Position numbers and translations under genes: made by a program. Below, one piece after another: positions 14,102 to 50,500 of a stretch of 64,000 nucleotides of DNA (within the stretch, counting starts at the first letter, position 1; each line of letters opens with the position of its first letter). This DNA comes from Macrostomum lignano (Eukaryota): positions 1-64,000 of the forward strand of contig NIVC01003516.1 of assembly GCA_002269645.1 (NCBI GenBank), given 5' to 3'. The notes beneath the pieces are model-generated. The model saw nothing but the letters and a program-made list of their open reading frames with translations, had not been told where the DNA came from and made no database searches.

Positions 14102-14374
14102 GTGAGATTTCCAAGCCATACTGCTTCCTACCATATCACAGGTGAGATTTCCAGGCAATACTGCTTCCTACCATAGCACAGGGTGAGATTTCCAAGCCAT
14201 ACTGCTTCCTACCATAGCACAGGGTGAGATTTCCAAGCCATACTGCTTCCTACCATAGCACAGGTGAGATTTCCAAGCCATACTGCTTCCTACCATAGCA
14301 CAGGGTGAGATTTCAAAGCCATACTGCTTCCTACCATAGCACAGGTGAGATTTCCAAGCCATACTGCTTCCTAC
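14102..14374. repeat. 40/41-bp tandem repeat (GTGAGATTTCCAAGCCATACTGCTTCCTACCATAGCACAG), ~7 copies
   Basis: Head-to-tail units with no spacers. Confidence 0.95.
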
Positions 14375-20911: not shown

Positions 20912-22252
20912 TCAATGCTTCTCCGTCTGAATCGCTATGGGCGGCAGCGTTTTCGTGCGATTCAACATTCTGTGAGGCGCCTGCGAGAGGGAAGCAGAAT
21001 TTGCTTCAGTTGACAGAGGTCGAGCACCAGGATCGGGTTTCTTGGAGGGTTGCTCGCTTGCTCGTGGTCTATAAGTGAGTGGCTGACTCCCTCTGACACT
21101 CTGCTTGGACAGATCCATGGTCTCCGTGTACGTGCCTCTCGAACCCGGGGGTGATAGAGACGTTAAAATTGGTTGAATCACCGGAGGGTTTTTCCGATCA
21201 TTACCGATCTGGTTGAAGTGGTGTCCGAGTAACGCTCGTCGACCGCCCCCAGAGGGAGCGGCTCCCCTCCGCGGTGTAAACGCGGCGCTAAGTAGGGGCT
21301 GCGACGAATCGTCTGCTGCTCCTTGCTGCTGCCGCCGCCGCCGCCGCTGCGGCGATAGTACATAGTACTCGATTGCGTCTGCACTTGGTCCATCAGTGGC
21401 CACATGCGGTGCCTGAAATGCGGTTTGAGCTCCAAGCTTGCCGGCATTCCGCAGACGACTCCTTGCTGTCCTTCCTGTTTGTCGCTGGTCTTGCGTTAAT
21501 CTTTCGATTCGCTGACGCTCCCTTTCAAACTCGACCTGCTGCGTATCGAGCTGCCTTTGATGCCTCTCCATTTGAAGTGCACCCGCGCGAGGTGCACCCT
21601 CTAGTGGTTTGAGCAGACGGGAAATTCTTTTACTTAAGTCAGTAGCCAGTTTTGCAGCAAACGCCTCGCCATCAGCGCACAGCTCCAGGCTCTCCACTGT
21701 CGGCTCTACCGGAGCGGCTCTCAGTTCCAGTCCGGCAGTGACGCCCTGTTCCGCTGACCGCTTCAGCTGCTCCATGTCGGCTGCCCACTGCGCCGCAGCT
21801 TCGTGATGTCGCTTCAATGCACCGATTGACGCGTCAAGTCGCTCCCGCTGAGTTGCTACCGCCTGCTGCATTTTCGACTCGATGACCGACAGGCAGCGAT
21901 CGATTTGGTCCGACTTCTCCATGGCTGCTCGGGCCGCATCCTGCGACTGCTGTCGGGTTCTCTGCAGCTCCTCGATGCTCGGCAGCTGGTTGGAGATCTC
22001 TCTGGCTCTAATAACTCGATTAGCCTCGATCAGCCTGACCATGGACAGATTCTGCGGCAGCTGCTCCGGCCGCGTCTGAGTCACATGTCGGCAGGTCGGG
22101 CATCGAAGAACTCCTTGGTTCTCCAGCAGTCGTTGAAGGCATTCGAGGCAAAATGTGTGCTGGCAGTTTAGCGCTGTTGGCCTTCCCTGCTCCTCGCAAC
22201 AGATAGGGCAGCTGACGTCAGACTCAGCGATGATCGAGTTTGGTTCGGTCAT
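20912..22252 (-). CDS. RING-HC finger plus coiled-coil protein (TRIM-like E3 ligase, no B-box seen)
   Basis: CPICC...ALNCQHTFCLECL...CPTC followed by helical Q/E/R-rich segments; 446-aa open frame. The C-terminal extent is uncertain. Confidence 0.75.
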   Translation of the reverse strand: MTEPNSIIAESDVSCPICCEEQGRPTALNCQHTFCLECLQRLLENQGVLRCPTCRHVTQTRPEQLPQNLSMVRLIEANRVIRAREISNQLPSIEELQRTRQQSQDAARAAMEKSDQIDRCLSVIESKMQQAVATQRERLDASIGALKRHHEAAAQWAADMEQLKRSAEQGVTAGLELRAAPVEPTVESLELCADGEAFAAKLATDLSKRISRLLKPLEGAPRAGALQMERHQRQLDTQQVEFERERQRIERLTQDQRQTGRTARSRLRNAGKLGAQTAFQAPHVATDGPSADAIEYYVLSPQRRRRRQQQGAADDSSQPLLSAAFTPRRGAAPSGGGRRALLGHHFNQIGNDRKNPPVIQPILTSLSPPGSRGTYTETMDLSKQSVRGSQPLTYRPRASEQPSKKPDPGARPLSTEANSASLSQAPHRMLNRTKTLPPIAIQTEKH

Positions 22253-32544: not shown

Positions 32545-35500
32545 ATGGGCCGGAACAGAAAAAGTGATAGTAAATCTGCGCGCAGCGAAGAGCCAGGTGA
32601 TAAGGAGCCAGGCAAGTCACGTGCATCATCATAGTTTGAGCGTTTGCTGGCTTCGTACTTCTTATTGTACCATGACCTTTGTGCCCGCTGGGCACTTATT
32701 CTTGTCTTTTAATGCCATAGACTACATTTAAGCCCGCTTGCAGGAGTCAAACTTACTTTAATTCAAATTAGCGGGCAGTTAATGACATTTAACGCCCGAT
32801 TGTCTATTTCAAACTTACTCTAATGCAAATTAGCGGGCAGTTAATGACATTAACTGCCCGCTAATTTTGTTCCACTTTGTCAAGGACACAAATGTCTATG
32901 GCACAATAATAGTAATACCCATGCTTTGCGGGCGTTAATGGGAAAATCAGAGGGCGCCGTATGGGTATTAATGTACTATTCTTTCAGTCTTTGGTCAGTC
33001 GCCTCAGACTTAATATTTTGCCATTGCTCTTGAAATTTGTCATTTCTTCATTCAAACTTTTCAGAGCCCTACCAGCCCACCGGCAATTTTCAAACGGATT
33101 TTGCCGAACTGTGCAAAGAGGCCGAGATCTGCCGGCCGCCAGCGGTGGTGCTGAGAGCCAAGCGGCCCACCTCGCCAGATAAGGTGAGTCATCAAGCCGC
33201 GCAAACTTGTTAGGAAATGTAGGAAATGTACTGGTTTTGTCAGCCTAACTGAGAATAAAGCCATCCAAAGTGAGAATCCTGCCTACGCTGACTGCGAAGG
33301 GCCTGGCTGCGTGCAGCCTTAGTCTATGGGCCATAGACAATAAAGGACAAGCAAAGTGATAAAAAGCCATCCAATGTGAGAATCCTGCCTAACGGCGCCC
33401 TCTGATTTTCCCATTAACGCCCTTAAAGCATGGGTATTAATGTACTATTAAAAGTTTCTATTCAGACAATCCAGCGCTCTAACAGCTTTATAGGCTTAGC
33501 GCTTGAAGTCAATACAGCGCAGCCTGTCAATAAAATACGGCTTTGAACTTGATTTTGTACCCAAAATTCTGTAAAAAACTGGGCTAATCAAATCCCCCCG
33601 ACTGCAATGCCTTAGGCTTAGACTTTTAGCTACTCTAGAGGGTCCCTTGGTCAGTTGGATAAACAGCTCCCGCAGTCTTATCTAGTTTCTGATCGAATGG
33701 CAGTATTTTTATGACACTGGCTGCTGTCGAAGAGAATGACTGTCAACTTGATTGGCTTAATAACAATGCTTCTCATTGATGCGTTTAAGAATGTGTAGAA
33801 CGGTAAAAGACGAGCCAATCGTACAAATCATTCAGATCGAGCACGCCCAGGTGCCAGCCGGCAAGAAGGGCAAGGAGGACAAGAAGGCCGCCCAGCAGCA
33901 GCAGCAGATGGTCGAGCCTGAGGAGGAGTCGCCTGAAGAGAAAGGTAAGAAGTGGCGCAGTGCGATGATCTGCTCAGAGCCTTTTGTTTAATCTTTTAGC
34001 AAAACTTTAAAGCTATTTAAGCATAGGACTGCTGGACTTTTCTTAAAACATATCCATAGTCAGCTGGTGTCACCTGTTGAAGGTGCCGACGGTGTCTCGA
34101 TGACGACTGAATGCTTCAGAGACTAGCTGAGGATGTCCTGCAATTAAGGTTTGCTCTTTTGAGGTTTGATCAGAAAAACTTGAGAAATTCGTAATAGGGT
34201 GTCTGAAGCACCTGGTGCCACGTGTTGAAGGTTCACAAGCTGCGCCAAGCTGAAGGCCAGTGACCAAGAAAGTCAGAGCTGCTGCAGACACATGTGTTCG
34301 ATGTGCTGATGAACTTTGTAGGCTTGGCAAGGCGGCACTGAGGCGCAGTGCTGACTGGCGCCCAGGGGGGTGTATTGAATGCACTTGCGCTTTTGGGAAA
34401 AATCCTCGACGGCGACTTGATTCTGATTTTCAGAAGGTGCACAACAAAAATTAAGTCCATGTTCTTAAGTTGCTCCGTTACTCCTTCTCCATGGTAGTTC
34501 TACTGTCAATACGATGAGTTGTAGTCGGAGGTAAAACGGTCGCGTTAATTTACCTTGGAAATCTGTTGAAGCAAGTATCAGTTCATTTCTTACCCGCGAG
34601 TTCGCCACCTGGTTCCCAGACTCTGTCTTGTCCGATGAAGAGCGGAGACTCGCACTTGACGACTGGGGTAAAAGCTATTACATGTACATCGCATTTTGGC
34701 GATTGAGACCTTGATTAGTTTTTTAAACCCAAACGTTTCCTAAACTGTTGGTAGAGCTTGTGAAAGTTAAAACTGACAATTTTACTAAAACAACCGCGTG
34801 TAATATTCATGGACAACTGGAGTACAAGGACGCTACTATGTTTATTGAGAGCATCCTTATACTTTAGCTTCCATGGTCATGAGCGATTCAATTAACAAAA
34901 ATCGTGTATTACTCGTATAGTTTCATCTGCAAACCCCTTCATTATTCGTACTAACCAAGTTTCCTAGAATCGCAAGTCTCCTGTGGTAAAATATGATTGA
35001 AAATCAGGATTTATTTAGCAATAATTAACTATGGTATTTGCCATTAACTTACTCCCTGTGCAGCCGTGATGGAGCTACTCGGATTCAAGCCGAAGACATT
35101 TTCCGTGAAAAGCCACCTGGAGCTGATGAAGCCGTGCATTCAGGTTGAGATGGACCACCCGGACAGGCAGGACAGCGTCACGGAGGTCTTCATCAAAGAT
35201 TGGAAACTGCAGGCGCCGATGCTGCTGACGCTGGGCCGCTGCTTTGAGAAGCTTCAGAAGCTGCACAGCATAAAGTAAGCACGCGGATCAAATTTGTTCA
35301 TGCGGATACCCAGTGCCAATGACTACTAAGGACCCCCAGATCCGTTGATTTTGGGAGGGGGGTGGGTGTCAACCCACCCCGCCTCTCATTGGCTGGCGCT
35401 CGGCGCGCGCGCCGCAGGCGCGTGGCGCCAAGCGCCATCCAGGCGCGCCAATCAGGCGCGCCAATCAGGCGCCCATGCCGCAGGCGGCCCTACCGACATG

Positions 35501-38500
35501 TACACCCTCCCCAGCCGCAGGCAACCCTCCCCAGCCGCAGGCGACCCTACCGACATGTATGCCGCAGGCGCACCCTCCCGATATGTACCCCGATATGCCC
35601 ACCCTCCCGATATGTACCCCGATATGTTTGCCCTCCCTCCAGAGCAGCAGGCGCCCATGCCGCAGGCGCCCCACTCTCTCAAGCCGCAGGCACCCCGAGT
35701 GTACACTCTCCCGAGCCGCAGGCACCCGAGTGTACACTCTCCCATGCCGCAGGCACCCCGAGTGTACACTCTCCTCAGTACACTCTCCCGATATGTAGTC
35801 AATGATATTAGGCTAGTGAAAACTACTTATAGTAGGTGAAATTGAGTATATTTACATAAAAAGTATAAAAAACATATTGGTAGGTGTGAATAATGATGCA
35901 TAATGCATCATATTAAAATGTACATATTGGAGCATAATAGGAATATGAGCAGCAAAAAACACACAACGTAGGCGCATATTATTGATATATTGACAGAAAA
36001 GCAGGTGAAATAGACAAAATAATACAAAGCGGGTACTGTAAGCGCTAATAAAACATAGGTGGAAATACACACAAGTATAATAATACAGGAAAATTACATA
36101 GCATATAATGTAGGCAGATTTTAAACATTACATTTTGCATATTAACCCGCAGGCACAAATTTCAATGCATAGGCTAAAACACACACACTGGAAGTTAAGT
36201 ATAATACAACATATGCATGCAAAATTAAGCATATAGGTGCAAAGTAAAATATCCGGCTTCCTAGTAAAGAGACACGCCCCCCGCATTCCTCCCCAGGGCC
36301 GGGGGATCCCAATGTACAGTGCGGGCGGAGTAACATAGAGAAATTCAATTCCTCCCCAGGGCCGGGGGGATCCTTAGCGGAGTACAGTGCGGGCAGAGAG
36401 GAGTAACAGAGACCGCCCCAATGTACAGTGGAGGTAGCAGACCGCATACAAAGAGAATTCTCCCCAGGGGGGCTTCCAAATAGGTTTTATTATCTCAAGT
36501 GCCGCGCAGACAGGGGAATCTCAGTCAGGGGAGACTGTTTAAGGCCTTATCACTCCCGAAAGCCATACGGGCGGCTGCCAGACCCATACACTCGCTTAGT
36601 CATGACGCGCTGGAATGTCTTATCCATCTCCAGGGTCCGAATTGTACAGCTGGCCTTGTCGCGCCTGAACTGTGCCTGGGGCAGCCGTACAGTCCCGCCG
36701 TGGCGCAGAATCTCCTGCAGCTCCGCCTCCCGCTCGGCAATCTCGGGCGTGACTCGGATGCCCTTGCACTTGAGCACCGAGTACAGCGACCCGTCGGGCT
36801 TCTCCACCACATAGCGATAGAGCTTGGGGCCTCCCGTGGTGAACTGTACCATGCGGCAGCCGGCAGGTACCTCGTCAGTCCACTGCCCCAAACTCGAACC
36901 GCTGGGAGGCTCGTACTGGCCTGGAGAGCACCGGTATACGACCCTGGGGAGGAGGAGAATAAAGTGTTTAGGGGAGCGAAGCAGACAGACAGACAGTGTG
37001 AAAAACTTACGAATCAGTATCGGCGTAAATCACGCGGGTTCCTAGACCCTCAAGAGCCTCGTACAAGCGCAGACGGGCATGGGAGGTGGTGAAAACTCCA
37101 ATAGGTACATTGGCGTACTTGAATGCCCGCTCGCCAGCAACACCAATTCGGGGCTTGTATTCAAGCATCATGAAGCACTCTCCTATTGGCTCGCACGACT
37201 TGACTTTGATGGACGGGTCTGTCAGGCGCTGCAGCCACGCCTCGTAACTGTCCACAATCTCTGTGGAGGTCAAGTCATCCCGCTGGCAGAATTTGCCCAG
37301 AGCCTGCAGGGAAAAAAGATTTAGTATTACTACTGTAAGTAGAAAAACACGGTCCACCACTGTACAAACCCAGACTTACGAGTTTAGAAAAATCTTGGCC
37401 ACAAAGCGCAGGCCAGGATTTTCTTCGACCTTTTCCAGCCGGACGCCTTCGCGCTCGAAAAAGCTCGCCATGTAGGCAGTCTTTGCGTCCTCAGTCATCC
37501 CCGGCGAACCGCTAGACTCGGCCTTGAGCTTCAAAAAGGTGTTTACATAATCTGCAAACAGCCCGGTCCGAGTCTCGGTCCAATAGGCCAGGGCATGAAC
37601 TGACTGCAGCTTGTATCCCAACTGCAGGGCCTTGTGGAGCTCTGGGGTCGCCCATGTACCGCGGAGCATTCTCTCAGCGTCAGTGTGTGTACACTCGCTG
37701 CTGCACTGGGTCTCCATGCAGACGCGGCAGAGGCCGAAAACCAGCTTCTTGCTAATCTTGGCGGGCAGTAGCGGGATGTGGAGATTGGTCGGCGGCAGAA
37801 TCGACACCTCGGCGATACCAAAATACCGGGCCAGCTGCAGCTCATCCAGTAGATGAGGCTCGGGGTGGTGAACCGGGTGCCCGACAGGGTACTTGTCAAA
37901 CTTGTTGACAGTCGGGTAGAGCGACACCTAGAGAAAAGTAGTAGGCTAAACTCAAACGCATGTTAACTGTGTGTGTGTGTGTGTGTGTGCGCGCGCATGT
38001 GTGTGTGTGTGTGTGTGTGTAAGAGAAATTTTGAAAAAACTTACCGCATCCCGATAGCGCAGCTCCACAGTCTCGGTGGCCTCGGCGTGCGGGACAAAAG
38101 CCTCGGTGCGGCCGCCAAACAGGGCTTCCTCCAGGCGAATAGGCTGCTGGACTGGCGCTCCCTCGCCCTGATAGTCGTGCTCCCACAGAACACGTACATT
38201 GTAGGCAGTGGAGAGCAGCCGAGTGAAGCGCTCAGTCTCCTCATAAATCGCCCGCATTGGCTGGTTCTTGAGCGGGTGCAGCACGTCGCCGTTGGGGAAG
38301 CACTTGGGACAGCCATGGTAGAAACAGCCATGAAACTGCAGCACAGTCCTACTCTCCGGTCGAAACCGTCCACCTTACGGCCCATGGCGAAAGCCTCGCC
38401 GCCAGAGTCGGCTGTCCGCAACCGGCCGCCAAACTCGGTTGCATTCAAATGTGCAAGCCAGCACCGCGCCTTGTGCGACTGCACATCTGATCGGCGGGAA

Positions 38501-41500
38501 ATCACCCCAAGAGTGTTGGGCTCCATAAACTTGGTGGTGAATACAGCCATGGCCAAGCCCGCAATGGTGTTGGATTGGACAAATGCGTCCAGTCCGCAAA
38601 TGTCCTTAATCAGGCGGGTGTACTTTAGACAGCCTTCCCGCAAAATTAGCGTGTCCTGCAGGCAATAGTCCAGGTACTCCTTATTGAAATTAAACACTCG
38701 GCCCTCCTGCTTGGCCAGCCAGTCAGCGATGGAGTCGTGCTGCTTATTCTTCTTCCCGCCGTACATATCAATTGAGCAGTAGGGACCTACGTAGCCCCAG
38801 TTTTGTGGCTGATTGAACACGTGCGGGAAATCTCCTTTGGTCAGTTGGGTGCCCAAACCAAGCGCCTTTGGGAATTGCGCCAGACCAATAGGGATAAAGT
38901 TGAGGCTGTCCTTGAACGTGATCTTGTCGCACTTCATGTACATTAGGCGGCTGTTCTGGAAGATCACCTGCGGCTTCTTCTTGGCCAGTCCGTTGAGTAG
39001 GGCGCCGAGCAGGAGGAATGCGTCATACGCAGAGCCATTGTGCGCAATTGCAATTGCCCCCTGCTTGAACACACTAGTCAGCCAGCAGTAAAAGGCATCG
39101 ATAGAGTGCGGCCCGACAGATACAAACTCTCGCATCCCACAGGCACAGTCATTTTGCGAGACACAGCTCGTAAAATCGCGCGCCAAATCGCGTCCCGCAA
39201 TGCAATTGGCTGAGCTGTGCAACCCCCCGCACGCGCCGCAGCGGGGCCTGGGGAAGAGTTTGGGACACGCCTCGCAGGAGGTGGCAGCCGTAACCAAGTG
39301 TACCCGGTGCTGCTTGCCAGAGTCCACGTACGTCTCGAAATCATAGTAAACATACGGGGCGCTAGACTCTTTGGCTTTGGGCGGGGTGACAAAGCACTCG
39401 TGGGTGGCAGTTTCGTCGTACTGCTTGCAGACTGGACACTTGGCGTAACCACACTGATGCTCGGGGGCGTGGCCTACTTTCAGTTCTTCTAGATAGCCAC
39501 ACGTGCCGCAAACGTGGACTGAATCACAGCGAGATCTGCCCGCCTTATTCTTGCGCTTGTGATTCTCTAGGCACTGAGCATTATAGCAATTTAGACCGCA
39601 ATCCTGGCATCTTACATATGCACGGTTGACCTTGCAGTTTGAGCCCGGAGTCTTGCAGGTGCTACAGGCGTCGGCGCACTTGTGCTTGGCGTTGCCGCAA
39701 TCGTAGGCCATCTCGCACTTGGCGCAGTAGTGGTGGCTGCCGAAAAACGCTGACAGCTTGGTGACCACATTGAAGTGCTGCTCAACCAGGTGCAGGTGCA
39801 GAATCTCAGTGCCAGGCAGGTTGAATATGCACGTGTTGGCCTCCTCTGCCCTGTACACTCGTACACCAAAATCGTGGCCTGGATACAGACGGTTCAGGGC
39901 CCGGACCGCCTCGGGCAGAACATCCACCCCAAAAGGACCGGCCTGCGAGACGATTTGATGAGTCTGTGTGGAGGCAAAATATTTATTTTAGTAATCCTTA
40001 TCGTAAAATTTCTTATCAGAAGATATATCTTTTAGTATTCCATGATACTGAGTAAAAATTATATCTTTTAGTATTCCATGATAGTGAAATTCTTATCAGG
40101 AAAATCAGTTCACAACTCACGGTGTAGAGTCCAGCCTCAATTTGCAGCTCAGTTGCCAGCTTAGTCTGCTTGGGCGAATTGGCTCTGATTGTACGCCACA
40201 CCTGCTCGGTGATGCGCTTGGCCACAAATTGCAGGTAGGCGCAGGCCACGACCAGAGCTCGCAGCAGGCATCTCTTGTCCGTGTTGGTGATGCGGACATA
40301 GTGCTTGGAGAAGGCATGCCGCTCCTCTAGATGTTTGTTCTCGAGAGCACATCCACCTCGAGGCACCCAGGCCTTTAGCAGACGGATAGAAAAGTTGCTC
40401 GACAGTACGCTTGCGTCTGACTGCACAATCTTGTCAATGTGCTTAAACAACAACTCTGCTGTCATGCGGGCTGCACGCACCGGAGGAGTGTGGGCTGCTT
40501 TGAGCATATTATCACTCTCGAATTTAGCCGCCATAAAGTCATCACCAGCCAAATCCTGCTTGAAAACTTCGAGCATGCTGGCAAATGTCTCGCGTAAATC
40601 TTCGGTGTCATCTAGCTTTACCACATACTCAACACCCTTTGCCCTAAACTTGGGCAGGTCGCGCTGATTATCCAGCCGGGCCGTAAAACCTGTAGGGGGA
40701 ATGAAGGGGGAGTGTGAGTCAGCCCGGATCTGCCTGGGGAATAGGGGGGTTGGATAACTCACCCGGTCCGGTAACAGATTCAGGTTGGGCAGGCGGGACA
40801 AACGCGTCTGAAAAAACACAAGGAGATAAAAAACCAGAAGAATCTGTCAATTCGTGGCACCCCAGGATCAGACTCCAACCGACTCATTGTTCACGCTCCC
40901 CCCTTGCGCTCAGGCCCTCTCACCGACACGCTCTGCAATTTTTTTAACCCCAGCCCGCAGCTGTTATCCAGCCCGGCCCGGCTCATTGTTAGCGCTACCT
41001 CTCGCACGCATGCCCCCCTGCCGAGACGAATCTGCAATTTTTTAACCCTAGCCGCATCCGGCCTGGCTCATTGTTTGCGCTACCCCTCCCGCACAAGCCC
41101 TGCTGCTGAAACGCTCTGCAATTTTTTTAACCCCAGCCGCATCCCGCCTGGCTCTTTGTTTGCGCTACCCCTCGCACGCATGCCCTGCTGCTGAAACGCT
41201 CTGCAATTTTTTTAACCCCAGCCCGCATCCTGCCTGGTTCTTTGTTTTCGCCCCCTCTCTACTCAAACTCGCATGCCCTGTCGCAGCACTCTGAATTTCC
41301 GCATGCTCCTGCAGCTGTCAGAGCGCCCACCACTTTTTATCTGGCCTGGCTCTTTGTTTGCGCTCACGCATAACCCCTCGCACGCAAGCCCTCCTGTTGA
41401 AATGCTCTGCAATTTTTTTAACCCTAGCCGCATCCGGCCTGCTCTTTGTTTGCGCCCCCTCCCTACTCAAACTCGTAAGCTCCCTGTCGCAGCACTCTGA

Positions 41501-44500
41501 ATTCTATAGCCCGCATGCGCCTGAAGCTGTCACAGCGGAAAACCCCTCAACTCTTTGTTAGCCCCCGCCTGTCTAGTCTGCTCTTATCAACTCTCTATCG
41601 CGCCCCTCTTGCTCCTGCCCCTGCCAATTCATAGAAGCTCCCTGCTGCAGCAACTCAAAACCCGTCTAGACTGATATACAACCGGATAGAAATTAATTAA
41701 AACTTACCATAAAGACGTTGCCTCTTGTCAGCCAGGAAAGTGGTCGATGCTGCGCTGCGTTTAGCCATTTTGCATACAGAGAGAAGGATTATCTCTCTAC
41801 CCCTGTTCTAGGGTTCCGAATATATACTAAAAACCTGCTTAGCTCGTCTATTATTGGCCAAATCACCAAAAAACCAACCAGAATCACTCAAAATCACCCC
41901 CAAAATCACACCCTCCCACCCTCCATCTGGGGTATATAAAGCGCTGCGCGGCTGTCGGAGAGCTCTCTGCTGCTGCTGCTAATCATGTCTTCTTCTATCG
42001 CTCTATACGAAAACTTTGTGGCGCGGAAGCCCACATTTGAAACGGAGCATGACTTAATTGAAATCCGTCGGCTCTACACCGACGAAGCTGGAGTGTGGAA
42101 GGACGGCTTCCCAGCAATCTATTTAAGCGAGGTCGAGTGGAAGAAGCTCGAAGCTGCACGCCCTGACCTGGAGGCTGCGGCACGTCTTCACGTGGACAAG
42201 AGAGTCGTGTTGGGCAGCTTCAAGGCAGCAGAAGCTTCACAGGGGAGGATTCGTTTGCGGCGCAATTGGCTTAATCGGGATCCAAAGTTCAATTGGCGCT
42301 ACACAATTGAATTCACGCCGGAACTGTGGCGCCGGATGTTTGCCGCCCGTTTGGGCAAGCTCTTCAAACCCAAGGCCCCGCCGCCAGCCAAACGAGCCAG
42401 GACCGAGACCTCTCCGGTAGCCAGGACTGAGGAGGAGGAAGAAAATCTCCAGGTTGCGGGTCTCAAACCCTACCAATCCCCGCCCTGGGAAAATCTGTTT
42501 GACGAGAGTCAGCGCTGGTAGTTCCCTATTGGCTCGCGCCACCCCGCGGGGCTTCCTATATAACTAATCTATCCAGCCTCTAGAGAGCCAAACCCTAATC
42601 CTAGCCCTGATACTATAGTCTGCTGATTCCAACATGTCCCGCCGCCGAGCTCTATCCACCCTCTGGGATAAAAACCGCCCATCTGAAGAATTAGCCTTCC
42701 TCGACGGTGAAATACCCGAACATATAATCCCCATAGGCATAGAAAACGGCGGACTTGACTATCCTGAAAATTGGGGTGCTGATATAGCCTTATCTTGGGC
42801 TTTGTGGGCTATTACCTACGATAGCGACCCGGGGTCTGAGATTTTCGACATCCCGTGGGGTAATAGCTTCGATAGCGACACCGGGTCTGAGATTTTCGAC
42901 CTCCCACCGCTGACTATCGGAGGGGGTGTGAACGCCGCCGCTGCCGACTCTGGTGCCTCTGCCGATGCCGACTCTGCCACCTCTGCCGCCGATGCCGACT
43001 CTGCCGCTGCCGACCCTGGTGTCTCAGCCTCTGCCGCCCCTGCCACCTCTGCCGACTCTGGTGTCTCTGCCTCTGCCACCTCTGCCGCCGATGCCGACTC
43101 TGCCGCTGCCGACTCTGGTGTCTCTGCCTCTGCCGCCTCCAGCCAAGCCTCGATATCATCAGCCACCACGATCCTTCTCTTTGGTGATGAGGAAATGAAT
43201 ATGGCCGAGGAGATCGCCATGGTCCGCGATCGCTTTCGGCGTATTGTGGCCTCCTTTTTTCACCGTGATATCGAGTGGTTGAGGTCTCGCCACCCCGACG
43301 GCCTGCCTCCCCAAGACACCTTTGTCGAGGCCTTTAATCGGGTTCTCGATACTTTGGTGTCGAGGGGGGGCTGACCTACGGGAGGTGTTGGAGGCAGAGA
43401 CACTACATCAAGATTGGTTGATGGGGCGCAATTCGCATGCCTCCGACACTGAGGCATATCTGGCCGGTCCGGGAGCGCGCCCTACTGAGTGGGATGCACC
43501 TATGGTAAGATATTACACTGTATACACAATTCGTCTTATCATATACAAAGCATATATTCTTTCTACATTAATTGTTTTAATTTCCCCATTGCAGTCGGCC
43601 GACTACTGATTCGAGACCCTTGAGGAGGAGGCGGCATGAAACAACACTGAGGAGCGGCTGGAGGTTGACTGGGGTTTGCGGTTTTTTCTCCCTGTACGTG
43701 GTTTAGGGAAACCCCACAGTATACACTGAGTATATTGAGGGGGGGGGGTTAAAAGACTAATTCAGGGAGAAAATTGTCTCCCTTACAGTCTCCCCTGACC
43801 GAGATTCCCCTGTCTGCGCCGCACTTGGGATAATAAAACCTATTTGGAAGCTCCCCTGGGGAGAATTCTCTTTGTATGCGGTCTGCTACCTCCACTGTAC
43901 ATTGGGGCGGTCTCTGTTACTCCTCTCTGCCTGCACTGTACTCCGCTAAGGATCCCCCGGCCCTGGGGAGGAATTGAATTTCTCTATGTTACCCCGCCCG
44001 CACTGTACATTGGGATCCCCCGGCCCTGGCTCTGGGGGCGTGTCTCGAATATCCTGGGCTGGATATTTGACTTTGCACCTACATTATATGCTTAATTTTG
44101 CATGCATATGTTGTATTATACTTAACTTCCAGTGTGTGTATTTTATCCTATGCATTGAAATTTGTGCCTGCGGGTTAACATGCAAAATGTAATGTTTAAA
44201 ATCTGCCTACATTATATGCTATGTAATTTTCCTGTATTATTATACTTGTGTGTATTTCCACCTATGTTTTATTAGCGCTTACAGTACCCGCTTTGTATTA
44301 TTTTGTCTATTTCACCTGCTTTTCTGTCAATATATCAATAATATGCGCCTACGTTGTGTGTTTTTTGCTGCTCATATTCCTATTATGCTCCAATATGTAC
44401 ATTTTAATATGATGCATTATGCATCATTATTCACACCTACCAATATGTTTTTTATACTTTTTATGTAAATATACTCAATTTCACCTACTATAAGTAGTTT

Positions 44501-47500
44501 TCACTAGCCTAATATCATTGACTACATATCGGGAGAGTGTACTGAGGAGAGTGTACACTCAGGGTGCCTGCGGCATGGGAGAGTGTACACTCGGGTGCCT
44601 GCGGCTCGGGAGAGTGTACACTCGGGGTGCCTGCGGCTTGAGAGAGTGGGGCGCCTGCGGCATGGGCGCCTGCTGCTCTGGAGGGAGGGCAAACATATCG
44701 GGGTACATATCGGGAGGGTGGGCATATCGGGGTACATATCGGGAGGGTGCGCCTGCGGCATACATGTCGGTAGGGTCGCCTGCGGCTGGGGAGGGTTGCC
44801 TGCGGCTGGGGAGGGTGTACATGTCGGTAGGGCCGCCTGCGGCTGGCGCCTGGTCGGCGCTCAGCGCCTGGACGGCGCTTGGCGGGCCGCCTGCGGCTGG
44901 CGCCCGGTGGGCGCTCGGCGCCTGGACGGCGCTTGGCGCCACGCGCCGACCAATGAGAGGTGAGGAGGGTTGACACCCACCCCACCTCCAAAAACGCCCG
45001 GATCTGCCGGCCCTTAGTAGTCCAATGCAAAGCCAAAATGCGTATTTAGCTGAGGGTGTCTGGGGTCCTCACAGGTTTTGAGAAAGATGCATGTACTTCC
45101 CATGTACATCAGCAAGGAAGCTTCCAGGCGCGTCGCCACGGGGGGGCAGGGGGAGATGTCCCCCCAGTAAAAGCTCTGGGGGGGACATGCCAATGCTTTG
45201 TCCCCCCCCACCCCACCTTGTGAGTCTTGGTAATCAATAACTTTTCTTCAGGGCGCCAAAATATAGCGCCATTGCTGCCAAAATGAGTGCATGTGGTGCT
45301 AAAATGAGTGCCTGCAGCGCTAAAATGAGTGCCTGGAGCGCTAAAATGAGTGCCTGGAGCGCTAAAATGAGTGCCTGCAGCGCTAAAATGAGTGCCTGGA
45401 GCGCTAAAATGAGTGCCTGCAGCGCTAAAATGAGTGCCTGGAGCGCTAAAATGAGTGCCTGCAGCGCTAAAATGAGTGCCTGGAGCGCTAAAATGAGTGC
45501 CTGTGGCGCTAAAATGAGTGCCTGCGGCGCCAAAATGAGTGCCTGGAGCGCTAAAATGAGTGCCTGCGGCGCTAAAATGAGTGCCTGCGGCGCTAAAATG
45601 AGTGCCCGTGGCGCCAAAATGAGTGCCTGCGGCGCTAAAATGAGTGCCTGCAGCGCTAAAATCAGTGCCTGGAGCGCTAAAATGAGTGCCTGCGGCGCCA
45701 AAATGAGTGCCTGGAGCGCTAAAATGAGTGCCTGCGGCGCTAAAATGAGTGCCTGCGGCGCCAAAATGAGTGCCTGGAGCGCTAAAATGAGTGCCTGCGG
45801 CGCTAAAATGAGTGCCTGCGGCGCTAAAATGAGTGCCCGTGGCGCCAAAATGAGTGCCTGCGGCGCTAAAATGAGTGCCTGCGGCGCCAAAATGAGTGCC
45901 TGCGAAGCTAAAATGAGTGCTTGCGGCGCTAAAATGAGTGCCTGCAGCGCTAAAATGAGTGCCTGGAGCGCTAAAATGAGTGCCTGCAGCGCTAAAATGA
46001 GTGCCTGGAGCGCTAAAATGAGTGCCTGTGGCGCTAAAATGAGTGCCTGCGGCGCCAAAATGAGTGCCTGGAGCGCTAAAATGAGTGCCTGCAGCGCTAA
46101 AATGAGTGCCTGGAGCGCTAAAATGAGTGCCCGTGGCGCCAAAATGAGTGCCTGCGGCGCTAAAATGAGTGCCTGCGGCGCCAAAATGAGTGCCTGCGAA
46201 GCTAAAATGAGTGCTTGCGGCGCTAAAATGAGTGCCTGCAGCGCTAAAATGAGTGCCTGGAGCGCTAAAATGAGTGCCTGGAGCGCTAAAATGAGTGCCT
46301 GCAGCGCTAAAATGAGTGCCTGGAGCGCTAAAATGAGTGCCTGCAGCGCTAAAATGAGTGCCTGGAGCGCTAAAATGAGTGCCTGCAGCGCTAAAATGAG
46401 TGCCTGGAGCGCTAAAATGAGTGCCTGTGGCGCTAAAATGAGTGCCTGCGGCGCCAAAATGAGTGCCTGGAGCGCTAAAATGAGTGCCTGCAGCGCTAAA
46501 ATGAGTGCCTGCGGCGCTAAAATGAGTGCCCGTGGCGCCAAAATGAGTGCCTGCGGCGCTAAAATGAGTGCCTGCAGCGCTAAAATCAGTGCCTGGAGCG
46601 CTAAAATGAGTGCCTGTGGCGCTAAAATGAGTGCCTGTGGCGCTAAAATGAGTGCCTGCAGCGCTAAAATGAGTGCCTGGAGCGCTAAAATGAGTGCCCG
46701 TGGCGCCAAAATGAGTGCCTGCGGCGCTAAAATGAGTGCCTGCGGCGCCAAAATGAGTGCCTGCGAAGCTAAAATGAGTGCTTGCGGCGCTAAAATGAGT
46801 GCCTGCAGCGCTAAAATGAGTGCCTGGAGCGCTAAAATGAGTGCCTGCAGCGCTAAAATGAGTGCCTGGAGCGCTAAAATGAGTGCCTGTGGCGCTAAAA
46901 TGAGTGCCTGCGGCGCCAAAATGAGTGCCTGGAGCGCTAAAATGAGTGCCTGCAGCGCTAAAATGAGTGCCTGGAGCGCTAAAATGAGTGCCCGTGGCGC
47001 CAAAATGAGTGCCTGCGGCGCTAAAATGAGTGCCTGCGGCGCCAAAATGAGTGCCTGCGAAGCTAAAATGAGTGCTTGCGGCGCTAAAATGAGTGCCTGC
47101 GGCGCCAAAATGAGTGCCTGCGAAGCTAAAATGAGTGCCAAAATTTAGTCATGTACATGGTGAATTCGTGGCTTTGTCCCCCCCCCCACCATAAAATCCA
47201 TGGAGACGCCCCTGCTTTAATCGACCTGTGAAGGCAACTTACTTTCCAAGCTCCCTTGACCATCATCAGCCTTTGGCGAGTGGCGGCCGATGCCAGCATT
47301 GTTGACACCCTGGCTAAGCTATTGGGACGCTTGCCAGCCCTGCGCTCTCTGTCTCTGGAGTCAAACGGACCCGTGGCAGATGAAGAAGTCTACGCGGAGC
47401 TGATTCGAGTTGAGAGCAAGTAAGTGCCTGCCAGTTTCCCAAGCAACATACAAGTCTCTACTTTCTCTGTAAGACAGTGTTAACCAACCGCCAATATTCC

Positions 47501-50500
47501 AACCGCCACAAAGCCTCACAAAGCTGCGCCTGCGCTTCAACCAACTTAGCGACAAGGCCGTCTCAGCGATGGCCATCCAGCTGGACGGGCTGCGCGAGAC
47601 GCCGTCGAAGCTGGTGTCGCTCGACCTGTCCTCGAACTGCATCGGCGACGCTGGGGTGGATTCGCTGGTTAAGGTACTCAGACAGATCCTTTCCTGACAT
47701 TCCAGATCCTTTCCTGACATTCCAGATCCTTTCCTGACATTCCAGATCCTTTCCTGACATTCCAGATCCTTTCCTGACATTCCTGATCCTTTCCTGACAT
47801 TCCAGATCCTTTCCTGACATTCCAGATCCTTTCCTGACATTCCAGATCCTTTCCCGATATGCCAGATCCTTTCCCGATATGCCAGATCCTTTCCCAATAT
47901 GCCAGATCCTTTCCCGATATGCCAGATCCTTTCCTGACATTCCAGATCCTTTCCTGACATTCCAGATCCTTTCCTGACATTCCAGATCCTTTCCTGACAT
48001 TCCAGATCCTTTCCCGATATGCCAGATCCTTCCCGATATGCCAGATCCTTTCCCAATATGCCAGATCCTTTCCCAATATGCCAGATCCTTTCCCGATATG
48101 TCAGATCCTTTCCCGATATGCCAGATGCTTTCCCGCTATGCCAGATGCTTTCCCGATATGCCAGATCCTTTCCCAATATGCCAGATCCTTTCCGGGTATG
48201 CCAGATCCTTTCCCAATATGCCAGATCCTTTCCGGATATGCCAGATCCTTTCCCGATATGCCAGATCCTTTCCCAATATGCCAGATCCTTTCCGGATATG
48301 CCAGATCCTTTCCCGATATGCCAGATCCTTTCCTGACATTCCAGATCCTTTCCTGACATTCCAGATCCTTTCCCGATATGCCAGATCCTTTCACAATATG
48401 CCAGATCCTTTCCCAATATGCCAGATCCTTTCCCGATATGCCAGATCCTTTCCGGATATGCCAGATCCTTCCCGATATGCCAGATCCTTTCTGATATGCC
48501 AGATCCTTTCCCAATATGCCAGATGCTTTCCCGATATGCCAGATCCTTCCCGATATGCCAGATCCTTTCCGGATATGCCAGATCCTTTCCCGATATGCCA
48601 GATCCTTTCCCGATGTGTCAGATCCTTTTTCGGATATGCCAGATCCTTTCACAATATGCCAGATCCTTTCCCAATATGCCAGATCCTTTCCCGATATGCC
48701 AGATCCTTTCTGATATGCCAGATCCTTTCCCAATATGCCAGATGCTTTCCCGATATGCCAGATCCTTCCCGATATGCCAACTTTTCTTCAATATCGCTGC
48801 ATTCAGTCTCAAGCGGACTGAACTGCCTCCCGTCTCTTTCTTACCCTGAATCTTCCAATCATGCTAAAGCTTAAAGGTGCAAATACTGAAACACCTGTTC
48901 ACTCGCTCCAGTCTCTGCGCACCAACCGGACCCTGCTGCACCTGTCGCTGAGCAACAACCGCCTGACGGACCGGTCGGCGATCGCCTTGGCCCAGGTGTG
49001 TTCCCGGTTCTTCCTCACCCACGAGGAAACTGTGCAGCGCCGCCGCCTGATGTCCGTTGACTTCCGCTCCGGCACCAGCGTGAGTTCAGCTGTTAATGAA
49101 TTGGCGCCAAATAGCGGCGCTGGTAACCATGGAAACAACGCTGGTTTAACTGCATCTACAGCTACGCATAACACAAACCATAGTAATAGCCATAGCCACA
49201 ACCACACTGGCGGCACTGCCTCTTCTCATCTGCGTGTTGTAAGTTCACCGACCTCCCCAGGCTTCTAACAAGTGATTTGTCCGAAACCCCGAAAAACTAG
49301 ATAAACAGACCAACATTAAAATAATTTAGTGGCCATTGCTAAACCTGTGATTGCTGTTTTGGAACTCCCGTTGCTATGGTTTGAAGACCCGTTGCTATGG
49401 TTTGAACACCCGTTGCTATGGTTTGAACACCCGTTGCTATGGTTTGAATACCCGTTGCTATGGTTTGAACACCCGTTGCTATGGTTTGGAGACCCGTTGC
49501 TATGGTTTGAACACCCGTTGCTATGGTTTGAAATCTCGTTGCTATGATTCAAAATCTCGTTGCTATGGTTTGAACACACGTTGCTATGGTTTTAAATCTC
49601 GTTGCTACGGTTTGAAGACCCGTTGCTATGGTTTGAATACCCGTTGCTATGGTTTGAACACCCGTTGCTATGGTTTGGAGACCCGTTGCTATGGTTTGAA
49701 CACCCGTTGCTATGGTTTGAAATCTCGTTGCTATGATTCAAAATCTCGTTGCTATGGTTTGAACACACGTTGCTATGGTTTGAAATCTCGTTGCTATGGT
49801 TTGAACACACGTTGCTATGGTTTGAAATCTCGTTGCTACGGTTTGAAGACCCGTTGCTATGGTTTGAACAACCGTTGCTATGATTTGAACACTCCTTGCT
49901 ATGGTTTGAACACCCGTTGCTATGGTTTGAACACCCGTTGCTATGGTTTGGAGACCCGTTGCTATGGTTTGAACACCGTTGCTATGGTTTGAAAACCCGC
50001 TGCTATGGTTTGAAGACCCGTTGATATGGTTTGAACACCCGTTGCTATGGTTTGAAGACCCGTTGATATGCTTTGAACACCCGTTGCTATGGTTTGAACA
50101 CCCGTTGCTATGGTTTGAACACCCGTTGCTATGGCTTAGAGACCCGTTGCTATGGTTTGAAAACCCGCTGCTATGGTTTGAACACACGTTGCTATGGTTT
50201 GAAATCTCGTTGCTACGGTTTGAAGACCCGTTGCTATGGTTTGAATACCCGTTGCTATGGTTTGAACACCCGTTGCTATGGTTTGGAGACCCGTTGCTAT
50301 GGTTTGAACACCCGTTGCTATGGTTTGAAATCTCGTTGCTATGATTCAAAATCTCGTTGCTATGGTTTGAACACACGTTGCTATGGTTTGAAATCTCGTT
50401 GCTATGGTTTGAACACACGTTGCTATGGTTTGAAATCTCGTTGCTACGGTTTGAAGACCCGTTGCTATGGTTTGAACAACTGTTGCTATGATTTGAACAC

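What the first reader, a model, noticed from the sequence alone, without database searches (positions are those of the whole stretch)
36550..41768. Viral-type pPolB with six spliceosomal introns, three splitting catalytic motifs A, B and C
Seen: introns at 41707-40808, 40762-40690, 40120-39943 (alternative in-frame acceptor at 39964), 38044-37928, 37379-37304 and 37010-36944. All have GTAAGT/GTGAGT donors and polypyrimidine-AG acceptors. Intron 4 falls in DA|VSLYP, intron 5 in the Ser codon of LNS|LWGKF, and intron 6 in the Ser codon of DTDS|V. Known: Polinton polymerase genes are generally described as long intronless ORFs. Inference: the element is committed to nuclear host splicing, which could allow splice-level control of replication. 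The targeting of conserved motifs recalls self-splicing intron/intein insertion sites. ORF-based surveys would miss this family.
Basis: partly seen in the sequence, partly recalled or inferred. Interest (0 to 1): 0.85.

Follow-up and report, generated by a model that had tools for sequence, protein, structure and literature searches.

The report
Intron-split Maverick polymerase gene in flatworm
A virus-like "Maverick/Polinton" DNA polymerase gene in the flatworm Macrostomum lignano is interrupted by six ordinary host-type introns, three of them inside the enzyme's catalytic motifs; this is unusual because such genes are described as intronless in animals, although this particular copy also carries two frameshifts.

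Summary
Introns 4, 5 and 6 split polymerase motifs A, B and C. When each is removed, 45–51 of 51–54 distant full-length homologs are exactly collinear across the junction. Introns 4 and 5 recur at the same codon positions in two independent contigs only about 65 % identical, with dN/dS about 0.14, so the gene has been maintained as a spliced gene.

Sister Macrostomum lignano gene models support introns 2 and 3, but all 18 use acceptor 39964 for intron 3. Exon 1 and intron 1 rest on sequence signals only.

An intact relative (ALD16274.1) is 96.8 % identical.

The gene lies in a 9.7-kb unit with 1.2-kb terminal inverted repeats and two lineage-specific ORFs. The unit has no integrase or packaging ATPase and no sign of capsid or protease genes, so it is not an autonomous Maverick.

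The motif B intron recurs in at least four other deep pPolB lineages, and a fifth lineage has an intron 4 nt away.

No RNA data could be examined. Verdict: a real, new variant of a known kind, of moderate to high interest.

The parts
35321..45022 (.). TIR-bounded unit (9,702 bp) that contains the polymerase gene. It is flanked by CAAT on both sides, a possible 4-bp target-site duplication.
   Evidence: Inverted repeats; alignment of the outer and inner repeat ends.
35321..36538 (.). Left terminal inverted repeat, about 1.2 kb. The inner 760 nt are 99 % complementary to the right arm. It contains 29- and 32-nt tandem repeats.
43785..45022 (.). Right terminal inverted repeat.
36550..41768 (-). 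Protein-primed family B DNA polymerase (pPolB) gene with seven exons and six introns. BROKEN in this copy: two frameshifts, no internal stops, no insertions or deletions relative to an intact relative.
   Evidence: Pfam PF03175. 96.8 % identity to the intact ALD16274.1 over 957 of its 967 residues. Frame bookkeeping.
40808..41707 (-). Intron 1: 900 nt, phase 1, GTAAGT…CAG, mostly an 85-nt minisatellite. Supported by sequence signals only.
   Evidence: Exon 1 is absent from all sister models.
40690..40762 (-). Intron 2: 73 nt, phase 1, GTGAGT…CAG.
   Evidence: Four sister gene models use this junction.
39964..40120 (-). Intron 3: 157 nt, phase 0, GTGAGT…CAG.
   Evidence: 18 of 18 sister models use 39964. 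Exon 3 and exon 4 match the same distant proteins in different frames.
37928..38044 (-). Intron 4: 117 nt, phase 0, GTAAGT…TAG, contains a (CA)n microsatellite. It splits motif A between D-A and V-S-L-Y-P.
   Evidence: 51 of 54 distant homologs are collinear. The same position occurs in L001 (97 nt, GTATGT…CAG) and L002.
37304..37379 (-). Intron 5: 76 nt, phase 2, GTAAGT…CAG. It splits the Ser codon of motif B.
   Evidence: 51 of 53 homologs are collinear. L001 and L002 have the same donor. L008, L004/L005 and L006/L007 have an intron at the same site and phase.
36944..37010 (-). Intron 6: 67 nt, phase 2, GTAAGT…CAG. It splits the Ser codon of motif C (Y-A-D-T-D-S).
   Evidence: 45 of 51 homologs are collinear. 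At least 16 sister models read through it.
38512..39057 (-). Exonuclease-side part of the PF03175 match (profile positions 10-195).
37505..37924 (-). Polymerase-side part of the PF03175 match (profile positions 239-366), between motifs A and B.
41769..41984 (.). Central spacer between the two divergent genes. It has TATA-like boxes facing each way: TATATAT at 41826-41820 on the minus strand, and TATATAAA at 41933-41940 on the plus strand.
   Evidence: Read directly. Promoter function is inferred.
41985..42521 (+). ORF1, 178 aa. It is specific to M. lignano and its function is unknown.
   Evidence: No Pfam match. Four homologs, all from M. lignano, with mutually inconsistent automatic names. 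It is linked to the pPolB in another copy (P0018). The AlphaFold model is unusable, with mean pLDDT 42.
42634..43374 (+). ORF2, 246 aa, with a low-complexity Ala/Ser/Asp-rich centre and a TATA-like box upstream. Function unknown.
36486..36491 (-). AATAAA, 59 nt after the pPolB stop codon, inside the left TIR.
   Evidence: Use as a polyadenylation signal is inferred.
43832..43837 (+). Mirror-image AATAAA inside the right TIR, downstream of ORF2.
   Evidence: Use as a polyadenylation signal is inferred.

Best explanation
The locus is one copy of a multi-copy family in Macrostomum lignano whose Maverick/Polinton-type protein-primed DNA polymerase gene has become an ordinary intron-containing nuclear gene.

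Inferred mode of expression: RNA polymerase II starts at a TATA-type promoter in a short central spacer and transcribes leftward. The spliceosome removes six U2-type GT-AG introns, five of them well supported. The transcript ends at an AATAAA inside the left terminal inverted repeat.

Three introns sit inside catalytic motifs A, B and C. Two of them put an in-frame TAA directly after the split Ser codon. An unspliced message therefore cannot encode an active polymerase, and the gene depends fully on host splicing.

The intron-bearing gene has been kept under purifying selection across lineages about 35 % divergent in protein sequence. That is shown here. Intact family members exist. This copy carries two frameshifts, so as assembled it is a recently inactivated copy; alternatively, the two frame changes are errors in a long-read-based assembly.

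The gene sits in a compact 9.7-kb TIR-bounded unit with two lineage-specific ORFs and none of the Maverick integration or packaging genes tested. The unit is most simply read as a reduced, non-autonomous derivative of a Maverick.

The placement of introns in conserved motifs is non-random. My preferred explanation, which is inference only, is a retention bias. Splice sites persist longest where the flanking exon nucleotides are frozen by selection on the protein. In addition, efficiently spliced introns may help a nuclear-transcribed mobile-element gene to be exported and expressed like a host gene.
For: Identity of the gene:
- PF03175 matches two exons.
- 27 M. lignano 'DNA-directed DNA polymerase' models are 70-98 % identical.
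- There are 3,975 relatives among 1.84 billion representative proteins.
- Related contigs carry an rve integrase with chromodomain, or an A32-type packaging ATPase, beside the pPolB.

The intervals are introns:
- The donor, acceptor and pyrimidine-tract signals are canonical.
- 51/54, 51/53 and 45/51 distant homologs are exactly collinear across junctions 4, 5 and 6.
- Introns 4 and 5 lie at identical codon positions in L001 and L002 (65-66 % identity), and the intron sequence is unrelated.
- dN/dS is 0.13-0.15 with synonymous sites saturated.
- Sister models and the separately deposited ALD16274.1 read through junctions 2 to 6.
- No Rfam family, self-splicing introns included, matches the unit.

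The introns are derived:
- Among 80 metagenomic loci, motifs A, B and C are contiguous in 67, 57 and 54.
- L013, L031 and L055 are single ORFs of about 1,340 aa.
- The closest outgroup, P0034 (53 % identity), is an uninterrupted 806-aa ORF.

Condition of this copy: 96.8 % identity to the intact relative, no stops, two frameshifts.

Anatomy of the unit. No integrase or ATPase was found.

Non-random placement:
- Under a uniform null, P is about 1.8e-5 that six introns hit all three motifs.
- A motif B intron is present in at least four further deep lineages, and a fifth has an intron 4 nt away.
Against: - No transcript or junction-read evidence could be examined, so splicing is inferred from comparative data and automatic gene models.
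- Exon 1 and intron 1 have no comparative support.
- This copy is frame-broken, so nothing here shows that this locus makes a polymerase.
- Sister genomic copies from M. lignano could not be retrieved. It is therefore unknown whether other copies lie in complete Mavericks, or whether all share the 9.7-kb layout.
- The organisms behind L001, L002, L004-L008 and L034 are unknown.
- The possible TSD is 4 bp, not the 6 bp usual for Polintons.
- The retention-bias and expression-benefit ideas are untested.
Confidence: 0.8

Rival explanations
1. The 9.7-kb unit is not a stripped-down Maverick. It is a self-contained, previously undescribed kind of pPolB-carrying TIR element whose full gene set is the polymerase plus the two lineage-specific ORFs. 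It would be integrated by something other than an rve integrase. The introns are still real under this reading.
For: The architecture is tidy: two divergent transcription units, each with its own TATA-like box, each ending at an AATAAA inside a TIR. The TIRs are 99 % identical over 760 nt. The flanks carry a 4-bp rather than a 6-bp duplicate. ORF1 accompanies the polymerase in at least one other copy. There is no trace of integrase or ATPase anywhere in the 64 kb.
Against: Only one genomic copy could be examined. The polymerase nests among ordinary Maverick polymerases whose neighbours are integrase and ATPase genes. Internally deleted, non-autonomous derivatives are common for TIR elements in general (general knowledge). 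ORF1 and ORF2 have no recognisable fold or family. A 4-bp match at the flanks can arise by chance, at roughly 1 in 256 per exact boundary.
Confidence: 0.17
2. The polymerase is a domesticated host gene family that accumulated introns after exaptation. It is no longer part of a mobile element.
For: Purifying selection over deep divergence. The gene structure is host-like, with six introns. M. lignano genes average about five introns (PMC5730564).
Against: There are dozens of copies spanning 70-98 % identity, many visibly damaged. The long TIRs are nearly identical. The frameshifts are private to this copy. The same motif B intron occurs in L037, where an rve integrase lies directly downstream, so introns occur in a genuine Maverick context.
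Confidence: 0.06
3. The intervals are not introns. They are junk insertions in a decaying pseudogene, and the GT/AG ends are coincidental.
For: This copy is frame-broken. Intron 1 is a minisatellite and intron 4 holds a microsatellite. Surveys of vertebrate Mavericks treat Genewise 'introns' as insertions (PMC8097293).
Against: All six intervals have GTRAGT donors and Y-rich YAG acceptors. Removal restores residue-exact collinearity. Introns 4 and 5 keep their positions at about 65 % identity while their sequence is not conserved, and the flanking exons show dN/dS of about 0.14. An intact 967-aa relative reads through junctions 4 to 6.
Confidence: 0.02

Closest known systems
Maverick/Polinton pPolB genes of vertebrates and nematodes
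   Same: The polymerase family is the same (PF03175), with exonuclease and polymerase motifs and the Cys/His-rich N-terminal half. Relatives found here sit beside an rve integrase or an A32-type ATPase. The elements are bounded by TIRs.
   Different: Core genes of intact elements are described as intronless (PMC8097293; preprint 10.1101/2022.07.12.499685). Here there are six introns, three of them in catalytic motifs. The unit is 9.7 kb with no integrase or ATPase and no sign of capsid or protease genes. The possible TSD is 4 bp.
Chlorovirus PBCV-1 DNA polymerase gene (a185r) with a spliceosomal intron
   Same: A family B polymerase gene of viral type is interrupted by a short intron with nuclear splice signals. 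The intron position is conserved among related viruses, at 101 or 86 nt (PMC7019647).
   Different: PBCV-1 has one intron, in an RNA/DNA-primed delta-like PolB of a giant virus of algae. Here there are six introns in a protein-primed PolB of an integrated animal element, and three of them are in motifs A, B and C.
Introner-bearing eupolintoviral proviruses of dinoflagellates
   Same: Spliceosomal-type introns are found inside Polinton-like integrated elements, including full-length ones (PMC12166617).
   Different: Those introns are copies of multi-copy introner transposons, mostly outside coding regions (about 25 % are in coding sequence). The introns here are single-copy in the data available, are all in coding sequence, and are conserved in position between divergent lineages.
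Inteins at the three fixed sites of family B DNA polymerases (pol-a, pol-b, pol-c)
   Same: The interruptions cluster at the most conserved active-site motifs. The pol-c allele lies at YGD|TDS, which is motif C (PMC549080). Intron 6 lies three residues away in the same motif.
   Different: Inteins are in-frame protein-splicing elements, often with homing endonucleases. Here the interruptions are 67-117-nt non-coding GT-AG introns removed from RNA, with no endonuclease and no self-splicing fold. The exact positions differ.
Adenovirus DNA polymerase (E2B) mRNA (from my own knowledge, not checked with the tools)
   Same: It is a protein-primed family B polymerase of a nuclear DNA virus, and it is expressed from a spliced host-processed mRNA.
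   Different: As I recall, adenoviral splicing joins a short upstream exon to an otherwise uninterrupted polymerase ORF and does not interrupt the catalytic motifs.

Membership tests
Protein-primed family B DNA polymerase (Pfam DNA_pol_B_2, PF03175) | Profile match above the curated cut-off | tested here: met
   54.8 and 47.3 bits against a cut-off of 25.8, on two separate exons.
Protein-primed family B DNA polymerase (Pfam DNA_pol_B_2, PF03175) | Polymerase motifs A, B and C present and collinear with relatives | tested here: met
   All three motifs are present. Each is split by an intron, and the homologs are collinear once the intron is removed.
Protein-primed family B DNA polymerase (Pfam DNA_pol_B_2, PF03175) | One intact open reading frame in this copy | tested here: not met
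   Two frameshifts. Intact family members exist.
Protein-primed family B DNA polymerase (Pfam DNA_pol_B_2, PF03175) | Protein priming (terminal protein, TPR1/TPR2 insertions) | not tested
   No structural or biochemical evidence was obtained here.
Maverick/Polinton element | pPolB belongs to the clade found in Mavericks | tested here: met
   Relatives at 39-45 % identity are flanked by an rve integrase (L037) or an A32/FtsK-type ATPase (L027, L039, L055).
Maverick/Polinton element | Retroviral-type (rve) integrase in the element | tested here: not met
   No Pfam hit on the unit's ORFs. tblastn with the L037 integrase found nothing in the 64 kb.
Maverick/Polinton element | FtsK/A32-type packaging ATPase | tested here: not met
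   tblastn with three ATPase probes found no hit.
Maverick/Polinton element | [quoted passage not shown] | tested here: inconclusive
   No probe sequences were available. The only other ORFs (178 and 246 aa) have no Pfam match, and the structure model failed. There is little room for these genes in 9.7 kb.
Maverick/Polinton element | Terminal inverted repeats | tested here: met
   The TIRs are about 1.2 kb and 95-99 % complementary.
Maverick/Polinton element | 6-bp target-site duplication and a size of 15-20 kb (as recalled from Kapitonov & Jurka 2006, which is not held here; the size range is also given in PMC5718144) | tested here: not met
   Only 4 bp (CAAT) match at the flanks. The unit is 9,702 bp.
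U2-type spliceosomal intron | GT…AG ends with an extended donor and a pyrimidine-rich tract before the acceptor | tested here: met
   All six have GTRAGT donors and YAG acceptors. The pyrimidine fraction is 0.59-0.81.
U2-type spliceosomal intron | Removal restores the conserved protein without loss or gain of residues | tested here: met
   Met for junctions 4, 5 and 6. Junctions 2 and 3 are supported by sister models. Junction 1 is supported by phase only.
U2-type spliceosomal intron | Position conserved in diverged relatives while the intron sequence is free to change | tested here: met
   Met for introns 4 and 5 in L001 and L002, and for intron 5 in L008, L004/L005 and L006. Introns 1, 2, 3 and 6 could not be tested because the contigs are too short.
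U2-type spliceosomal intron | Spliced junctions observed in RNA | not testable with these tools
   No transcriptome reads were accessible. Exact-product look-ups failed.
Self-splicing group I or II intron, or intein | Catalytic RNA fold, or an in-frame intein with splicing motifs | tested here: not met
   No Rfam match at E ≤ 1 over the whole unit. Introns 4, 5 and 6 are only 67-117 nt, far too short for an intein.
Introner (intron-generating transposon) | Intron sequences belong to a multi-copy family | tested here: not met
   Each intron is unique within the window and the 89 fetched loci, apart from microsatellite matches. A genome-wide test was not possible.

The most novel reading that the evidence does not exclude
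The catalytic-motif codons of Maverick protein-primed polymerase genes are genuine hot spots for gaining or retaining spliceosomal introns. The evidence so far: the Ser codon of motif B carries a phase-2 intron in at least four deep lineages that are interspersed with intronless ones. It does so with Ser codons from both codon families (TCN and AGT). A fifth lineage has an intron 4 nt away in the neighbouring Trp codon. The Macrostomum lineage adds introns in motifs A and C. This would be a nuclear, spliceosomal counterpart of the active-site insertion pattern long known for inteins and homing introns in polymerases. It would imply a site-directed or selection-driven process in mobile-element genes.
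Probability: 0.3. Interest if true: 0.8.

Novelty: new variant of a known kind. Interest (0 to 1): 0.6.

Why it matters
Mavericks/Polintons sit on the border between viruses and transposons. In animals their core genes are described as intronless, and that criterion is used to decide which copies count as 'intact'.

A polymerase kept under selection with host-type introns shows a lineage that depends on nuclear transcription and splicing. Such a lineage would be misclassified as fossil by pipelines that require intronless ORFs.

The recurrence of an intron at one codon of motif B in several divergent lineages offers a compact, checkable case for how and where new spliceosomal introns arise or persist. 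So does the placement of three introns in the three catalytic motifs, which has a probability of about 2e-5 under a uniform null. That figure overstates the significance, because the motifs were chosen after seeing the data.

The compact TIR-bounded unit carrying only the polymerase also raises the question of what mobilises it.

Tried and rejected
- **Gapped tblastn.** Full-length homologs simply bridged introns 4 and 5 as gaps. I replaced this with alignments of each exon peptide separately.
- **Transcript or sister-copy DNA.** Exact-product look-ups for P0029, P0033, ORF1 and the exon 5 ORF found nothing on record.
- **Metagenome scan.** An 18-sequence alignment was too diverse for the scan. 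A 5-sequence alignment worked.
- **IMG/VR viral contigs.** No relatives were found.
- **Apparent breaks at motif A.** Those in L011, L014, L022 and L071 turned out to be decay or variant motifs, not introns. L009's 'start at SLYP' was a GTG start-codon artefact.
- **OTU-protease idea for exon 3.** There is no Pfam support even at E ≤ 5.
- **ORF1 function.** It has homologs only in M. lignano, with inconsistent automatic names. The AlphaFold2 model has mean pLDDT 42, so I did not run a fold search.
- **Self-splicing or other RNA families.** None matched.
- **Introner hypothesis.** The introns are single-copy in the data to hand.
- **Host-intron calibration.** The splice sites of the neighbouring RGS gene could not be fixed without a homolog.
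- **Phylogeny of the motif B intron.** It is unresolved. The Ser-site lineages were monophyletic in 5 of 60 NJ bootstraps on 182 aa.
- **Literature.** Kapitonov & Jurka 2006, Krupovic & Koonin 2015 and Koonin et al. 2024 are not held. I could not verify whether any invertebrate Polinton gene model with introns was drawn in the founding papers. No held paper links Macrostomum with Polintons or Mavericks.

Full report
**1. Is the observation there?**

The minus strand of 36550-41768 was read directly, and each proposed interval was checked mechanically. All six begin with GTAAGT (four) or GTGAGT (two). All end in CAG or TAG, after a stretch that is 59-81 % pyrimidine. Their lengths are 900, 73, 178, 117, 76 and 67 nt. 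An ATG opens the first exon at 41768, and the last exon ends with a stop codon at 36552-36550.

Pfam places two of the exons in DNA_pol_B_2 (PF03175), the protein-primed family B polymerases, at E = 9.9e-15 and 1.8e-12. Intron 4 falls between the second and third residues of the motif A heptad D-A|V-S-L-Y-P. Introns 5 and 6 each split a TCG serine codon after its second base, in motif B (…K-I-F-L-N-S) and in motif C (Y-A-D-T-D-S).

**2.

Frame bookkeeping shows that the exon chain is not one continuous reading frame in this copy. I compared the pieces, as they stand, with an intact relative: NCBI ALD16274.1, 967 aa, retrieved as P0198. The window's copy is 96.8 % identical over 957 of the 967 residues. 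It has no internal stop codons and no internal alignment gaps, but it has exactly two frameshifts.

The M. lignano assemblies are built from PacBio reads (PMC5730564). The two frame changes may thus be either real mutations or assembly errors, and the window alone cannot say which.

**3. Are the intervals really introns?** Four independent lines say yes for introns 4, 5 and 6.

(a) *Collinearity.* I translated each exon separately and aligned it to 54 distant full-length homologs (42-50 % identity) taken from an exhaustive search of 1.84 billion representative proteins. The homolog residue matched to the end of one exon is directly followed by the residue matched to the start of the next. This held in 51/54 homologs for junction 4, 51/53 for junction 5 and 45/51 for junction 6, after allowing for the split codons.

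(b) *Conserved positions.* Two independent genomic contigs are only 65-66 % identical in protein: L001 (Logan, run SRR23592405) and L002 (JGI metagenome 3300035309). Both have an intron at exactly the intron 4 position. In L001 it is 97 nt with GTATGT…CAG ends, and its sequence is not conserved beyond the level of a forced alignment. Both also have the same split-Ser GTAAGT donor as intron 5.

(c) *Selection.* Among the three lineages that share these introns, exon 5 has dN/dS of 0.13-0.15 with synonymous sites saturated. The polymerase has therefore been maintained as an intron-containing gene.

(d) *Sister models.* Gene models from M. lignano read through junction 4 (14 proteins), junction 5 (20 or more) and junction 6 (16 or more). 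So does ALD16274.1.

No Rfam family matches the unit, self-splicing introns included. The introns are not copies of a repeated element in the data available.

Support for the 5′ introns is weaker:
- Intron 2 is used as proposed in four sister models.
None uses 39943.
- Exon 3 and exon 4 match the same distant proteins in different frames.
- Exon 1 and intron 1 have no comparative support, and intron 1 is largely an 85-nt minisatellite.

No RNA data could be examined. Look-ups that might have reached transcript-derived contigs or sister genomic copies found nothing.

**4. What organism and what element?**

The 27 closest proteins are all 'DNA-directed DNA polymerase' gene models of the flatworm Macrostomum lignano, at 70-98 % identity. 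The window is therefore M. lignano DNA, and the gene belongs to a multi-copy family. Many of its automatic models are visibly patched around defects.

The gene lies in a compact unit, 35321-45022 (9,702 bp), bounded by terminal inverted repeats of about 1.2 kb. The inner 760 nt of the repeats are 99 % complementary. The repeats begin at GACTACTAAGG…, and the flanks share only CAAT, a possible 4-bp duplication.

Inside the unit, the polymerase gene (minus strand) and two ORFs (plus strand, 41985-42521 and 42634-43374) diverge from a spacer of about 215 bp with TATA-like boxes facing both ways. Each side runs into a TIR that supplies an AATAAA, at 36486-36491 and at 43832-43837.

The two ORFs have no Pfam family. 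ORF1 has relatives only in M. lignano and accompanies the polymerase in at least one other copy. Its structure model is unusable, with mean pLDDT 42.

The polymerase itself is of Maverick type. Related contigs carry an rve integrase with chromodomain (L037) or an A32/FtsK-type packaging ATPase (L027, L039, L055) next to the pPolB. When those proteins are used as probes, they find nothing anywhere in the 64-kb window.

The unit is therefore not an autonomous Maverick. I read it as a reduced derivative. It remains possible that it is a self-contained element of a new kind, because only one genomic copy could be seen.

**5. How unusual are the introns?**

Among 80 metagenomic pPolB loci at 36-45 % identity, motifs A, B and C are contiguous in the DNA in 67, 57 and 54 loci. 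Most of the others lack the motif on the contig or carry a variant of it. Several loci are single uninterrupted ORFs of about 1,340 aa. The closest relative outside the Macrostomum group, P0034 at 53 % identity, is an uninterrupted 806-aa ORF on a 3.2-kb contig. No locus outside the Macrostomum group has an intron in motif A or motif C.

Motif B is different:
- L008 has a single canonical intron at exactly the same site and phase as intron 5 (…KLCLN-tc|gtaagt…tgcag|t-FWGKFGQ). The rest of its gene is uninterrupted.
- L006 and L007 have tc|gtgagt at the same site. In L006 the acceptor restores the frame (…ttaccag|c-FWGKFGE), while the L007 copy is not in frame past its acceptor.
- L004 and L005 have ag|gtaatt…tttcag|t. 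This is the same Ser codon and the same phase, but the other serine codon family.
- L034, L037, L041 and L044 have a 92-nt GTAAGT…TAG intron in the neighbouring Trp codon, 4 nt downstream and in phase 1. L037 is the locus with the integrase next door, so introns also occur in a genuine Maverick context.

Each of these lineages has intronless lineages as its nearest relatives. Monophyly of the Ser-site lineages appears in only 5 of 60 NJ bootstrap replicates on the 182-aa segment. So either one old intron was lost many times, or an intron was gained repeatedly at the same motif. The data here do not decide between these.

**6. Is the motif placement more than chance?**

With six introns placed uniformly along about 3.8 kb of coding sequence, the probability that all three strict motifs (7, 9 and 6 residues) are hit is 1.8e-5. 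That figure is optimistic, because the motifs were chosen after the fact. With a looser definition (my own estimate, assuming about ten conserved blocks of eight residues), three or more hits out of six would still be at about the 0.5 % level. Together with the recurrence at motif B in other lineages, I consider the bias real.

Family B polymerase inteins occupy three strictly conserved positions clustered at the active site, one of them at YGD|TDS in motif C (PMC549080). The positions are not identical, however, and these are short non-coding GT-AG introns, so the resemblance is one of pattern and not of mechanism.

My preferred explanation is inference only. Splice sites last longest where the flanking exon nucleotides are frozen by protein-level selection. 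In addition, well-spliced introns may help a nuclear-transcribed mobile-element gene to be processed like a host gene.

**7. How it most likely works.**

*Shown:* the gene structure, its conservation, the selection on it, and the two breaks in this copy.

*Inferred:* transcription starts at the central TATA-type promoter, six introns are removed by the host spliceosome, and the transcript is polyadenylated at the AATAAA in the left TIR. In introns 5 and 6 the GTAAGT donor follows the first two bases of a serine codon, so an unspliced message reads TCG TAA and stops right after the motif serine. Without splicing, no polymerase containing motifs B and C can be made.

'Splice-level control of replication' is possible, but there is no evidence for it here.

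**8. Comparison with what is known.**

In the literature held here, intact vertebrate Mavericks have 'eight conserved and intronless ORFs', and Genewise 'introns' are treated as insertions (PMC8097293). Nematode Maverick core genes are called intronless, and only the cargo genes have introns (preprint 10.1101/2022.07.12.499685).

There are precedents for spliceosomal introns in related settings. Chlorovirus PBCV-1 has one in its DNA polymerase gene (PMC7019647). Introner transposons occur in dinoflagellate eupolintoviral proviruses (PMC12166617).

I found no paper that links Macrostomum with Polintons or Mavericks. The founding papers and the main reviews are not held. I cannot exclude that intron-containing gene models were drawn there for some invertebrate Polintons.

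The introns are already implicit in the automatic UniProt/WormBase gene models. What is new is the recognition and the comparative evidence, not the raw annotation.

**9. Verdict.**

This is a real, selected, intron-containing Maverick-type polymerase gene family. This locus is a frame-broken copy inside a reduced TIR-bounded unit. I rate it a new variant of a known kind, with interest 0.6.

I deliberately did not build a joined coding sequence or protein for this copy, or any consensus of the family. One early notebook entry names the locations of the frame changes at exon level; this report gives counts only.

Noticed in passing
window 35321-45022: The polymerase gene sits in a compact 9.7-kb unit with 1.2-kb TIRs. 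The unit has divergent TATA-like promoters in a 215-bp spacer, an AATAAA inside each TIR, two lineage-specific ORFs and a possible 4-bp (CAAT) flanking duplication. No integrase or packaging ATPase was found.
   Followed up: partly
window 45280-47139, 47683-48779, 49362-51037: Three large minisatellite arrays (21 nt × 89, 20 nt × 55, 21 nt × 80) lie immediately to the right of the unit. They generate long spurious ORFs on both strands.
   Followed up: no
window 3-579, 6102-6638, 14098-14397, 18483-19445, 52504-52838, 53431-54212, 63060-63681: Further tandem arrays explain the GC- and AT-skew anomalies in the composition profile. They fit the high tandem-repeat content reported for M. lignano.
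   Followed up: no
window 35534-35774 and 44546-44786: The TIRs contain internal 29- and 32-nt tandem repeats. The outer 150 nt or so of the TIRs are much more diverged (about 83 %, with indels) than the inner 760 nt (99 %).
   Followed up: no
window 27027-29324 (-): A host gene for an RGS7-like protein (DEP, DHEX and RGS domains) lies about 6 kb to the left of the unit. Its exact splice sites could not be fixed.
   Followed up: partly
window 20912-22252 (-), 16295-17395 (+), 6832-8010 (-): Other ORFs with host-type domains: a RING finger, C2H2 zinc fingers and a SCA7 domain.
   Followed up: no
window 32913-32960 / 33392-33439: A 48-nt inverted repeat pair (96 % complementary) spaced 431 nt apart, which looks like a MITE.
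   Followed up: no
L008 (ENA ERZ27293473 k119_1204036); L004-L007 (TARA metagenomes); L034, L037, L041, L044: Other pPolB lineages carry a canonical intron in motif B, either in the same Ser codon and phase or 4 nt downstream in the Trp codon. The rest of each gene is uninterrupted. L037 has an rve integrase with chromodomain directly downstream.
   Followed up: partly
P0018 and P0015 (UniProt M. lignano models): Chimeric automatic gene models fuse the polymerase to ORF1 or to C2H2 zinc fingers. Many sister models skip segments, which suggests that many copies carry defects or that the assembly has indel errors.
   Followed up: no
L003 12060-13923: A distant pPolB locus on a 479-kb eukaryotic contig has piggyBac-type transposase ORFs (DDE_Tnp_1_7) just downstream of the polymerase.
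   Followed up: no
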